This document shows, in pieces, positions 37,301 through 40,300 of a stretch of 64,000 nt of DNA; position 1 is the first letter of the stretch; every line of letters begins with the position of its first letter. This DNA is from Haliotis rubra (taxonomy: Eukaryota). The DNA is taken from the NCBI RefSeq assembly GCF_003918875.1, contig NW_025765292.1:868001-932000 (forward strand), in the 5' to 3' direction. The position numbers were made by a program, and so were the translations under genes. A model generated the notes under the pieces. That model made no database searches. It worked only from the letters and a program-made list of their open reading frames with translations, and was not told where the DNA came from.

Positions 37301-40300
37301 AGGTGATGAAACAGAGCAGATGAGAGCCTGATGATGTACTGATGGGATAGTCATGTTAAGCTGTCTATGTCAGAGGGCTAGCACTCTAAACATTAGTAGA
37401 CTGGACTAGGATATCTGTTCAATATTGCTATTCTGTTTTTCTGTAGGACGCTGATAGCTAAAGATGAGAGAGTGAACCTGGTGTCCTTCACTGGCAGCAC
37501 ACCAGTAAGTAAAGGGGACAGATGGTTTACTTCAACATGGAAAAGTCAGTTATTGTGTATTTAGCAATGAAATACTGTAATTAAGAAACCTAATATAGAA
37601 TTAATATCTTAAATATGTATTGTTTCAGTGGAGCACTGACACTTTTTGCTGGAACTACCTAACATCTGATGCTATGTTCAGAGCAAAATCATGATGCTCA
37701 GTATGAAAATTGACATATTCACTGATTGCTATGTTGTTTAAGTTAAGTGAGAAGTGGTAATTTCTGTAACTTTGAGGTGTTCAGCAAGGCACTGTTCTGT
37801 TGCAGATTGGGCAGAAGGTGTCTCTGATGGTTCAGGAAAGATTTGGTAATGTCCATTTGTTTTCTCTGACCTGTTTAGGGTTAACACTTTCGTATAGGGT
37901 TAACACTTTTTATATAGTCTAGCTACCTCTGTGGAGCATTATCGGTCAAGTTGTCTCACGGCACTGCAATTCACTGGCAGAGTTGCCTCCCTTAGATGTT
38001 CCAGGATTCAGTGATTGTAGTTTCTGAGATTTACATTGATTATATCCAACTGATCAGACCATACTGATCCCAAGATCTGCATTGATTTAGGTTTTCCTCC
38101 AATAAAATGCTAATGTGCTGTGATATTGCTGGAATACTGAGTTTAAAAAAATAATGTCAGTCAGGGTAAAGTAGCAAATGATGACATATACAGGTACATT
38201 TAAAAATAAATGAATGTCTGTTTATTGTGAAAAACATTGAAAGTTGTATCAGTAGCTTTTTGTATGTTTCAGGCAAATTTTTGTTGGAGCTTGGTGGAAA
38301 CAATGCAATAATAGGTATGTTATGATAAATGGAATACAAGAGTCATGTCTTTCATGGGCTCAAATATTCAGTACCATAAACTGAAGGAACTGTGCAGTGA
38401 TTAGGTTGTCAGAATCGGTCATCAGTACCTTGTTATGAGAGCCTGATTACCTTGTTATGAGAGACTGATTACCTTGTTATGAGAGACTGATTACCTTGTT
38501 ATGAGAGACCTGATTACCTTGTTATGAGAGACTGATTACCTTGTTATGAGGGACTGATTACCTTGTTATGAGAGACTGATTACCTTGTTATGAGGGACTG
38601 ATTACCTTGTTATGAGAGACTGATTACCTTGTTATGAGAGACTGATTACCTTGTTATGAGAGATTACCTTGTTATGACTGATTACCTTGTTATGAGAGAC
38701 TGATTACCTTGTTATGAGACTGATTACCTTGATTACCTTGTTATTATGAGAGACTGATTACCTTGTTATGAGGGACTGATTACCTTGTTATGAGAGACTG
38801 ACCTGATTACCTTGTTATGAGAGACTGATTACCTTGTTATGAGGGACTGATTACCTTGTTATTATGATTACCTTGTTATGAGAGACTGATTACCTTGTTA
38901 TGAGAGACTGATTACCTGATTACCTTGTTATGAGAGACTGATTACCTTGTTATGAGAGACTGATTACCTTGTTATGAGAGACTGATTACCTTGTTACCTT
39001 GTTATGAGGGACTGATTACCTTGTTATGAGAGACTGATTACCTTGTTATGAGAGACTGATTACCTTGTTATGAGAGACTGATTACCTTGTTATGAGAGAC
39101 TGATTACCTTGTTATGAGAGACTGATTACCTTGTTATGAGAGACTGATTACCTTGTTATGAGAGACTGATTACCTTGTTATGAGAGACTGATTACCTTGT
39201 TATGAGAGACTGATTACCTTGTTATGAGAGACTGTTACCTGATTACCTTGTTATGAGTGTTGACTGATTACCTTGTTATGAGAGTTAATAGACTGATTAC
39301 CTGTTAGTTATGAGTAATTCTTCTGTGTTCTGATTACCTTGAGATGTTATGAGGGACTGATTACCTTGGTGACTACTCTGGTTGGCCGTTGGTTCAAATT
39401 CTAGATTCACACAGATTGAAGCATGGTTATGTGTCCGACCTTTCATACCTTGATGGTACACCATTAAATCACATTAATCATAGGTTTTGTTGGTGTTTGT
39501 ACAAAACTGAGTTGAGGACATAAGTCATCGTGTCTGTAGGTCAAGAAAAGGGTAGACGATGATCTGTTGATATGCAGTGAAGGACATGACCTAGGCACTT
39601 GCATATGTGTGTGTTGTTTCAGATGGAGTGTTGTATGGGCCTCTACACAGTAAGCAGGGAGTGGCCCAGTACCAGCAGGCAGTGGCTGATGCAGTGGCAC
39701 AGGGAGGCAAGATAGAGTGTGGAGGCAAGGTAGGTCTTACATTAGGGTGTGGAGGCAAGGGATGTCTTACATGAGGGTGTTGAGGCAAGGTAGGTCTTAC
39801 ATGAGAGTGTGGAGGCAAGGTAGGTCTTACATGAGAGTGTGGAGGCAAGGTAGGTCTTACATGAGGGTGTGGAGGCAAGGTAGGTCTTACATGAGAGTGT
39901 AGAGGCAAGGTAGGTCTTACATGAGAGTATGGAGGCAAGGTAGGTCTTACATGAGGGTGTGGAGACAAGGTAGGTCTTACATGAGAGTGTGGAGGCAAGG
40001 TAGGTCTTACGTGAGGGTGTGGAGGCAAGGTAGGTCTTACATGAGAGTGTGGAGGCAAGGTAGGTCTTACATGAGGGTGTGGAGGACAGGTAGGTCTTAC
40101 GTGAGGGTGTGGAGGCAAGGTAGGTCTTACATGAGGGTGTGAAACACAGGTGGGCAAGATAGGGTGTGGAGGCAAGGTAGGTCTTACATGAGGGTGTGGA
40201 GGCAAGGTAGGTCTTACATGAGGGTGTTTTGAGGCAAGGTAGGTCTTACATTAGGGTGTGGAGGCAAGGTAGGTCTTACATGAGAGTGTGGAGGCAAGGT

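What the first reader, a model, noticed from the sequence alone, without database searches (positions are those of the whole stretch)
38315..39622. Catalytic-cysteine segment of ALDH7A1 is missing, in frame, with a 22-bp satellite in its place
Seen: the exon ending ...[10 protein letters not shown](G) (phase 1) is followed by the exon starting (AT)GVLYGPLH (phase 1). I found no sequence between them encoding the ~60-aa segment containing GTAGQRCT, the ALDH7 nucleophile. The visible exons total 481 aa. Adding 60 gives 541, or 511 from Met31, which equals the short human isoform. The remaining exons look intact and join in frame. Either the assembly collapsed across satellite arrays flanking these exons (favoured, given the scrambled array end at 39235-39368 and other consensus errors), or repeat-mediated deletion created a catalytically dead allele or pseudoenzyme. 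ALDH-derived non-enzymatic proteins such as omega-crystallins are known in molluscs, though from a different ALDH family.
Basis: partly seen in the sequence, partly recalled or inferred. Interest (0 to 1): 0.7.

Follow-up and report, generated by a model that had tools for sequence, protein, structure and literature searches.

The report
Abalone ALDH7A1 lacking its two catalytic exons
In the blacklip abalone reference genome, the two exons of the conserved enzyme gene ALDH7A1 that carry its catalytic cysteine are missing and a locus-specific 22-bp repeat array sits in their place; this is most likely one damaged gene copy, or else a local assembly fault, and not a new kind of protein.

Summary
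The window (Haliotis rubra contig C402) holds a complete, otherwise intact ALDH7A1 gene at 31345-45833 on the + strand. Compared with the 541-aa orthologs of H. asinina, H. rufescens and H. cracherodii, it lacks exactly residues 307-366. The public H. rubra RefSeq model has the same hole (481 aa).

In the three relatives these 60 residues lie on two exons, 95 and 85 bp in H. asinina, which is why the loss is in frame. About 642 bp of H. asinina sequence (both exons, the intron between them and the flanking intron) is replaced in the window by the 22-bp array. The array grew from a single-copy motif that is native to the left breakpoint.

The missing DNA is nowhere else in the 1.38-Gb assembly. 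This was checked with protein and DNA searches, and a positive control worked.

The remaining exons evolved under strong purifying selection on the H. rubra branch (dN/dS about 0.08), so an old or fixed loss is unlikely. The assembly is haploid: 30x Nanopore data from a heterozygous animal, with 0.53 Gb of haplotigs purged.

I favour a real, recent deletion allele (about 0.55) over an assembly artefact (about 0.35). Reads could not be consulted, so this stays open. Interest is low.

The parts
31345..45833 (+). ALDH7A1 (antiquitin, alpha-aminoadipic semialdehyde dehydrogenase) gene as assembled. All exons are present and open except the two catalytic ones.
   Evidence: tblastn of P0194 and P0270 finds the exons at 87-100% identity apart from flanking intron read-through. 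The public model P0272 has 481 aa.
38273..38314 (+). 42-bp exon encoding [13 protein letters not shown], the general-base Glu motif. It is the last exon before the hole and is phase 1 at both ends.
   Evidence: It is 100% identical to P0194 residues 293-306.
38315..38425 (+). Unique left part of the assembled intron. It is homologous to the H. asinina intron at L047 8480-8565.
   Evidence: The blastn/local alignment of window 38339-38454 with L047 8480-8594 gives 84% identity.
38426..39234 (.). 22-bp minisatellite with unit TTACCTTGTTATGAGAGACTGA. There are about 37 copies, 27 of them perfect. The first 1.3 units are the native single-copy sequence also seen in H. asinina.
   Evidence: TRF, unit parsing and left-boundary alignment. 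The array is unique to this locus in G000.
39235..39368 (.). Degenerate right end of the array. Five units are interrupted by short unrelated inserts, and the region abuts the right flank.
   Evidence: There is no significant similarity to the missing H. asinina interval: score 21 against a shuffle mean of 17.9, with 36 of 300 shuffles scoring as high.
39369..39622 (+). Unique right part of the assembled intron. It is homologous to the H. asinina intron from L047 9237, which is 18 bp downstream of the donor of the second missing exon.
   Evidence: Local alignment of window 39369-39480 with L047 9237-9354. blastn aligns 39378-41002 with L047 9248-10860 at 81%.
39623..39732 (+). Exon encoding (D)[35 protein letters not shown]. 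It is the first exon after the hole and starts in phase 1.

Best explanation
The assembled sequence represents a real haplotype of the sequenced blacklip abalone. In this haplotype about 642 bp of ALDH7A1 was deleted: exon X1 (95 bp, carrying GTAGQRCT with the catalytic Cys), the intron after it, exon X2 (85 bp), and parts of the two flanking introns.

The deletion runs from a native 22-bp motif in the upstream intron to a short look-alike motif (CACTG-GATTAC) 18 bp beyond X2. The native motif has expanded into a minisatellite of about 40 copies at the junction.

The two lost exons total 180 bp and lie between phase-1 introns. The intact donor at 38315 and acceptor at 39622 would therefore splice in frame to give a 481-aa protein without the nucleophile, which is a loss-of-function allele.

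The animal is inferred to be heterozygous. The intact haplotig was either not assembled or was removed by haplotig purging, so the haploid reference and its RefSeq annotation carry only the damaged copy.

Shown: the exact extent of the missing DNA, its absence from the whole assembly, the origin of the repeat unit, and the constraint on the rest of the gene. Inferred: that the molecule exists in vivo, heterozygosity, and the microhomology mechanism.
For: 1. Extent and position. H. asinina L047 8595-9236 has no counterpart in the window, while both flanks align colinearly at 81-84%.

2. Origin of the repeat unit. The array's first 1.3 units are the native sequence found once in H. asinina (TTCCTTGTTATAAGACACTGATTACATTG). 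The array arose in place and is unique in the genome.

3. Right breakpoint. It lies beside ...CACTGTGATTACGTG in H. asinina, which resembles the unit boundary GACTGATTACCTTG. Such a short direct repeat matters to DNA repair or replication slippage, not to an assembler.

4. Assembly continuity. The window has no N and the flanks are single copy.

5. Assembly history. The reference was built from about 30x Nanopore reads of a heterozygous animal and cut from 1.91 to 1.38 Gb by Purge Haplotigs (PMC6774278). Only one allele per locus survives.

6. Recency. dN/dS on the H. rubra branch is about 0.08 (dS 0.064, dN 0.005, 351 codons), so any loss is recent or polymorphic.

7. Local context. The same gene carries other lineage-specific intronic minisatellites in H. 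rubra, H. asinina and H. cracherodii, so array birth at this locus is ordinary biology.
Against: The array shows many multi-base indels but almost no substitutions. This looks like long-read consensus noise and shows that the region is poorly polished.

Earlier scan notes report other conserved exons missing next to repeats in this same assembly. That could reflect a systematic assembler fault.

The microhomology is short (about 11 of 12 nt with one indel) and depends on which of two plausible alignments of the junction is chosen.
Confidence: 0.55

Rival explanations
1. Local assembly or consensus artefact. The true H. rubra genome has both exons, and about 0.64 kb of unique sequence next to the tandem array was lost during the pipeline of wtdbg / DBG2OLC assembly, QuickMerge merging and Racon/Pilon polishing. 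The degenerate array end would then be chimeric consensus.
For: - The assembly method is error-prone around repeats: 30x Nanopore, wtdbg v1.2.8, DBG2OLC and QuickMerge.
- The array carries many irregular, indel-only units.
- Other exon drop-outs next to repeats are noted in the same genome.
- The gene is otherwise perfect and strongly constrained.
Against: Repeat collapse needs the repeat on both sides of the lost piece. The unit is native only to the left side and the array is unique in the genome.

The relatives show no arrays there.

The degenerate end holds no remnant of the missing interval.

The region has no gap, and both flanks join colinearly to their orthologous positions.
Confidence: 0.35
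2. Fixed loss in H. rubra. The species expresses a 481-aa ALDH7A1-derived protein without the nucleophile, either as a pseudoenzyme with a non-catalytic role or as a dying gene.
For: - The in-frame join with intact splice sites would escape nonsense-mediated decay.
- No other copy of the segment or of the gene exists in the assembly.
- ALDH-derived crystallins are known in molluscs (general knowledge, not tested here).
Against: The lost 60 residues form strand-helix-strand-helix in the catalytic domain (E304-307, H313-325, E336-341, H342-357 in the model of the intact ortholog). This is more than an active-site residue.

All 34 other animal orthologs aligned keep the segment, with a nearly invariant GTAGQRCTT motif.

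The remaining exons show dN/dS of about 0.08 with no acceleration on the H. rubra branch. That pattern fits an enzyme still under selection.

The array units are nearly identical, so the event is young.
Confidence: 0.05
3. The two exons exist elsewhere in the genome, either moved or on an unplaced contig, and the gene is completed from there.
For: None found.
Against: Whole-assembly protein searches with the sea-urchin and Haliotis segments hit only paralogous ALDH exons at 30-45% identity.

A DNA search with L047:8595-9247 found nothing. The neighbouring L047:7900-8594 found the window, which serves as a positive control.

A degenerate GTAGQRCT pattern gave only two one-mismatch hits, both in a non-ALDH context.
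Confidence: 0.03

Closest known systems
ALDH7A1 / antiquitin (alpha-aminoadipic semialdehyde dehydrogenase); Haliotis orthologs XP_046329682.1, XP_071112903.1 and XP_067667116.1
   Same: The gene is single copy with the same exon order. The shared 481 residues are 96-97% identical. The ELGGNNA general-base motif, the NAD-binding half and the C-terminal [19 protein letters not shown] motif are all present.
   Different: Residues 307-366 are lacking. These include the catalytic Cys in GTAGQRCT, two strands and two helices.
Loss-of-function structural variants carried by a collapsed haploid reference of a heterozygous marine invertebrate
   Same: A conserved gene is damaged in the one haplotype that was retained. 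The alternative haplotigs were purged. Similar missing-exon cases are noted elsewhere in this genome (not checked by me).
   Different: Here the deletion is tied to the birth of a minisatellite and not to a transposon. It also happens to keep the reading frame.
Intronic minisatellites of abalone ALDH7A1, including the 30-bp splice-donor ('mirage') array in the next intron (scan note s1-327963)
   Same: These are lineage-specific tandem arrays that arise from local intron or exon-edge sequence in the same gene.
   Different: The 22-bp array derives from plain intron sequence. It is found only in H. rubra and is the only one associated with loss of exons.
Omega-crystallins (ALDH1-derived lens proteins of cephalopods and scallops)
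   Same: They are ALDH-family proteins that have lost enzymatic activity in molluscs (general knowledge).
   Different: As far as I know they are full-length proteins of the ALDH1 class. The present case is an internal 60-residue deletion in ALDH7, and there is no evidence of recruitment.

Membership tests
ALDH7A1 (antiquitin) orthologs | Orthology: best matches are ALDH7A1 across the whole length, and the locus is single copy | tested here: met
   PDB best hits are antiquitin 2JG7 and human ALDH7A1. Identity to the Haliotis ALDH7A1 proteins is 96-97%. The flanks are single copy.
ALDH7A1 (antiquitin) orthologs | General-base glutamate in the ELGGNNA motif | tested here: met
   Exon 38273-38314 encodes [13 protein letters not shown].
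ALDH7A1 (antiquitin) orthologs | Catalytic cysteine in the GTAGQRCT motif | tested here: not met
   The motif is absent from the window and from the whole assembly. It is nearly invariant in 34 other orthologs.
ALDH7A1 (antiquitin) orthologs | Complete Aldedh (PF00171) catalytic domain | tested here: not met
   A beta-alpha-beta-alpha unit is missing, corresponding to residues 304-357 of the intact H. asinina model. The model of the 481-aa form has pLDDT below 50 at the junction, residues 292-310.
Assembly collapse between flanking repeats | The same repeat lies on both sides of the lost segment in the true genome | not testable with these tools
   No H. rubra reads were available. Indirectly, the unit is native only to the left side, the relatives have no arrays there, and the array is unique in G000.
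Non-enzymatic ALDH-derived protein (crystallin-like pseudoenzyme) | The inactive form is fixed in the species and the fold is retained | tested here: inconclusive
   Fixation could not be tested. The fold is unlikely to be retained. The AlphaFold control was also weak at the C-terminus, so the comparison is soft. The constraint pattern fits a working enzyme.

The most novel reading that the evidence does not exclude
The deletion is real and common, or even fixed, in Haliotis rubra. Blacklip abalone would then express an in-frame ALDH7A1 subunit that escapes nonsense-mediated decay and lacks the nucleophile. Such a subunit could act as a non-catalytic or dominant-negative partner. If fixed, the species would lack the canonical lysine-catabolism / aldehyde-detoxifying enzyme that the other animal orthologs examined here retain.
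Probability: 0.05. Interest if true: 0.6.

Novelty: new member of a known kind. Interest (0 to 1): 0.15.

Why it matters
The main value is as a caution. The only public H. rubra ALDH7A1 protein (RefSeq, 481 aa) lacks the catalytic cysteine and should not be used as the species' enzyme sequence or read as lineage-specific evolution.

If the deletion allele is real, it is a clean example of two things. First, a minisatellite was born from a native 22-bp motif alongside a microhomology-bounded deletion. Second, a recessive loss-of-function allele was carried into a haploid reference by haplotig purging.

Together with similar notes on this genome, it argues for re-checking missing-exon calls against reads or a HiFi assembly before any biological interpretation.

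Tried and rejected
- **Pfam PF00171 scan of the whole genome.** Only 14 of 144 candidates were scored and all were paralogs, so it was not useful for this question.
- **Degenerate GTAGQRCT pattern.** It gave 0 hits in the window and two one-mismatch hits elsewhere that are not ALDH exons.
- **Protein-collection search with the missing segment (P0270:300-372).** I was looking for H. rubra transcript or read-contig fragments. No Haliotis fragment appeared among the 120 listed hits, and the remaining 242 were not shown.
- **Exact look-ups of three ORFs that overlap the junction or flanks.** I hoped to find independent read-based contigs. None is on record.
- **Alignment of the degenerate array end with the missing H. 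asinina interval and with the H. rufescens/cracherodii introns.** The similarity is no better than for shuffled sequence, so there is no remnant of the lost DNA.
- **AlphaFold comparison of the deleted and intact proteins.** The intact control also had pLDDT of about 25-31 over its last 70 residues with this 35-sequence alignment. The low C-terminal confidence of the deleted form is therefore not evidence. Only the junction and the assignment of secondary structure are used.
- **Intron alignment with H. rufescens/cracherodii.** These species are too diverged (about 72% identity, and only near exons). H. asinina was used instead.
- **Joined spliced model.** I did not send any joined spliced model built from the window to a search. 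Window exons were searched singly by reference, and the database's own 481-aa model P0272 stood in for the spliced product.

Full report
**What is in the window**

The window is G000:C402:868001-932000 of a 1.38-Gb, 2855-contig genome. Earlier scan notes and the protein database identify it as the blacklip abalone, Haliotis rubra. There is no N in the window.

On the + strand lies a complete ALDH7A1 (antiquitin) gene. tblastn with a sea-urchin ortholog (P0066) and with the H. cracherodii/rufescens protein (P0194, 541 aa) places exons from 31345 to 45833.

The exon at 38273-38314 encodes [13 protein letters not shown], with phase 1 at both ends and a GTATGT donor. The next coding exon is 39623-39732. 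It encodes (D)GVLYGPLH...CGGK and matches antiquitin 2JG7 residues 338-372.

Nothing in the window matches residues 307-366 of the Haliotis protein, even at E=10. A degenerate GTAGQRCT pattern has no hit with up to 3 mismatches. Between the two exons TRF finds a 22-bp array at 38426-39240, and degenerate units continue to 39368.

**Comparison with relatives**

The 90%-identity cluster of P0194 holds identical 541-aa proteins of H. cracherodii and H. rufescens, and a 541-aa protein of H. asinina, P0270. The public H. rubra model P0272 has 481 aa. It aligns to these at 96-97% identity with one gap of exactly 60 residues. Among 35 animal orthologs aligned, only H. rubra lacks the segment, and its GTAGQRCTT..RRL core is nearly invariant in the rest.

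I fetched the genomic loci of the three relatives (L045, L046, L047). In all of them the 60 residues lie on two exons. In H. asinina these are:
- X1 at L047 8772-8866, 95 bp, which carries the Cys.
- X2 at L047 9135-9219, 85 bp.

Together they total 180 bp between phase-1 introns. This explains the preserved reading frame, so the in-frame outcome is not in itself remarkable.

**Breakpoints**

Introns of H. rufescens/cracherodii are too diverged to align, but H. asinina aligns well:
- Window 37409-38335 and 38339-38454 match L047 7443-8410 and 8480-8594.
- Window 39369/39378 onward matches L047 9237/9248 onward.

L047 8595-9236 therefore has no counterpart in the window. That is about 642 bp: 177 bp of intron, X1, the 268-bp intron, X2 and 17 bp of the following intron. 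The array sits exactly there.

The first 1.3 array units are the native sequence, which occurs once in H. asinina as TTCCTTGTTATAAGACACTGATTACATTG. The minisatellite was therefore born in place. It is unique to this locus in the assembly and absent from the three relatives.

At the right breakpoint H. asinina reads ...CACTGTGATTACGTG, which resembles the unit boundary GACTGATTACCTTG. This suggests a short imperfect direct repeat flanked the lost piece. It is an inference from one outgroup and a short match.

The five degenerate units at 39235-39368 contain small inserts that are not derived from the missing interval.

**Is the segment elsewhere in the genome?**

No.
- Protein searches of all 1.38 Gb with the sea-urchin and Haliotis segments return only paralogous ALDH exons at 30-45% identity.
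- A DNA search with L047:8595-9247 returns nothing. The adjacent L047:7900-8594 finds the window at 74-84% identity, which serves as a positive control.
- The unique flanks of the array are single copy, so no second haplotig of this locus survives in the assembly.

**Age and constraint**

I compared codons exon by exon and summed the counts. Over 351 comparable codons the H. rubra branch has dS 0.064 and dN 0.005, giving omega of about 0.08. This is similar to the H. asinina branch (about 0.05) and the H. rufescens branch (about 0.02).

If the gene had been non-functional for the whole branch, one would expect about 50 non-synonymous changes. About 4 are seen. Twenty-seven of the roughly 42 array units are perfect copies. 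Any real loss is therefore very recent or polymorphic.

**Structure**

In an AlphaFold model of the intact H. asinina protein, the missing residues form E304-307, H313-325, the Cys loop, E336-341 and H342-357, a beta-alpha-beta-alpha unit of the catalytic domain. They map to 2JG7 276-335.

The model of the 481-aa form has pLDDT below 50 across the junction at 292-310. The intact control also scores about 44 over residues 291-300 (pLDDT below 50 at 294-302), so this junction figure adds little. Over the equivalent stretch, confidence in the rest of the catalytic domain is about 75-80 in the 481-aa form, against about 88-90 in the intact control.

The control's last 70 residues were also poorly predicted with this shallow alignment, so I draw nothing from the C-terminus. 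A folded, functional pseudoenzyme is unlikely but not excluded.

**Real allele or artefact?**

According to the genome paper, the reference was assembled from about 30x Nanopore reads with wtdbg v1.2.8 and DBG2OLC. The two assemblies were merged with QuickMerge and polished with Racon and Pilon. Purge Haplotigs then reduced the assembly from 1.91 to 1.38 Gb because of high heterozygosity (PMC6774278). Only one allele per locus remains, and repeats are poorly polished.

For a real deletion allele:
- The array unit is native to one side only.
- The array is unique in the genome.
- The right junction lies at a microhomology.
- The flanks are colinear with their orthologous positions.
- There is no gap.
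- No remnant of the lost DNA is present.

For an artefact:
- The array has an indel-rich, substitution-poor pattern.
- Other missing-exon cases beside repeats are noted in this genome (I did not check them).

No H. rubra fragment of the segment or of the junction was found in the protein or contig collections.

My odds are: real deletion allele, probably heterozygous, about 0.55; assembly artefact about 0.35; fixed loss or pseudoenzyme about 0.05; exons elsewhere about 0.03.

**Known or new**

The gene is ordinary ALDH7A1, and the public annotation already carries the hole without comment. Both live explanations are familiar: a loss-of-function structural variant in a collapsed haploid reference, or a local assembly fault.

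The one mildly instructive point is the link between the in-place birth of a minisatellite and a deletion bounded by a short direct repeat. Interest is low.

I sent no joined spliced model built from the window to any search. Window exons were queried one by one by reference, and the database's own model P0272 was used where a spliced product was needed.

Noticed in passing
L046:12842-13608 (H. cracherodii ALDH7A1 locus); also L046:13578-14401 and L045:14990-15234: This is a second, independent splice-donor minisatellite in another intron of the same gene. It has 14.8 copies, 99% identical, of a 52-bp unit made of the exon end [10 protein letters not shown] plus the gtaagt donor. A 35-bp array follows it. 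H. rufescens has one extra pseudo-exon copy and a 34/70-bp array at the same place.
   Followed up: partly
window 39717-42578 and L047:9573-10854: The 30-bp exon-end plus splice-donor array already reported for this window is shared with H. asinina (about 43 copies, 80-85% identity). It is absent from H. rufescens and H. cracherodii. It therefore predates the rubra/asinina split and is much older than the 22-bp array.
   Followed up: partly
window 43825-44578: Two adjacent 58-bp tandem arrays (4.5 and 8.2 copies, 90% matches) lie in the intron after the [14 protein letters not shown] exon of ALDH7A1. Their origin was not examined.
   Followed up: no
window 46308-46551 and 47342-47433: Further short tandem arrays with periods of 19 bp and 16/32 bp lie just downstream of the ALDH7A1 stop codon.
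   Followed up: no
L047:8667-8702 (H. asinina intron upstream of exon X1): The sequence TACCTTGTATACTGTTGATAGTTATGGCTGGACTGA starts and ends like the H. rubra 22-bp unit. It may be an old degenerate copy of the motif, but the similarity is not significant against shuffles.
   Followed up: partly
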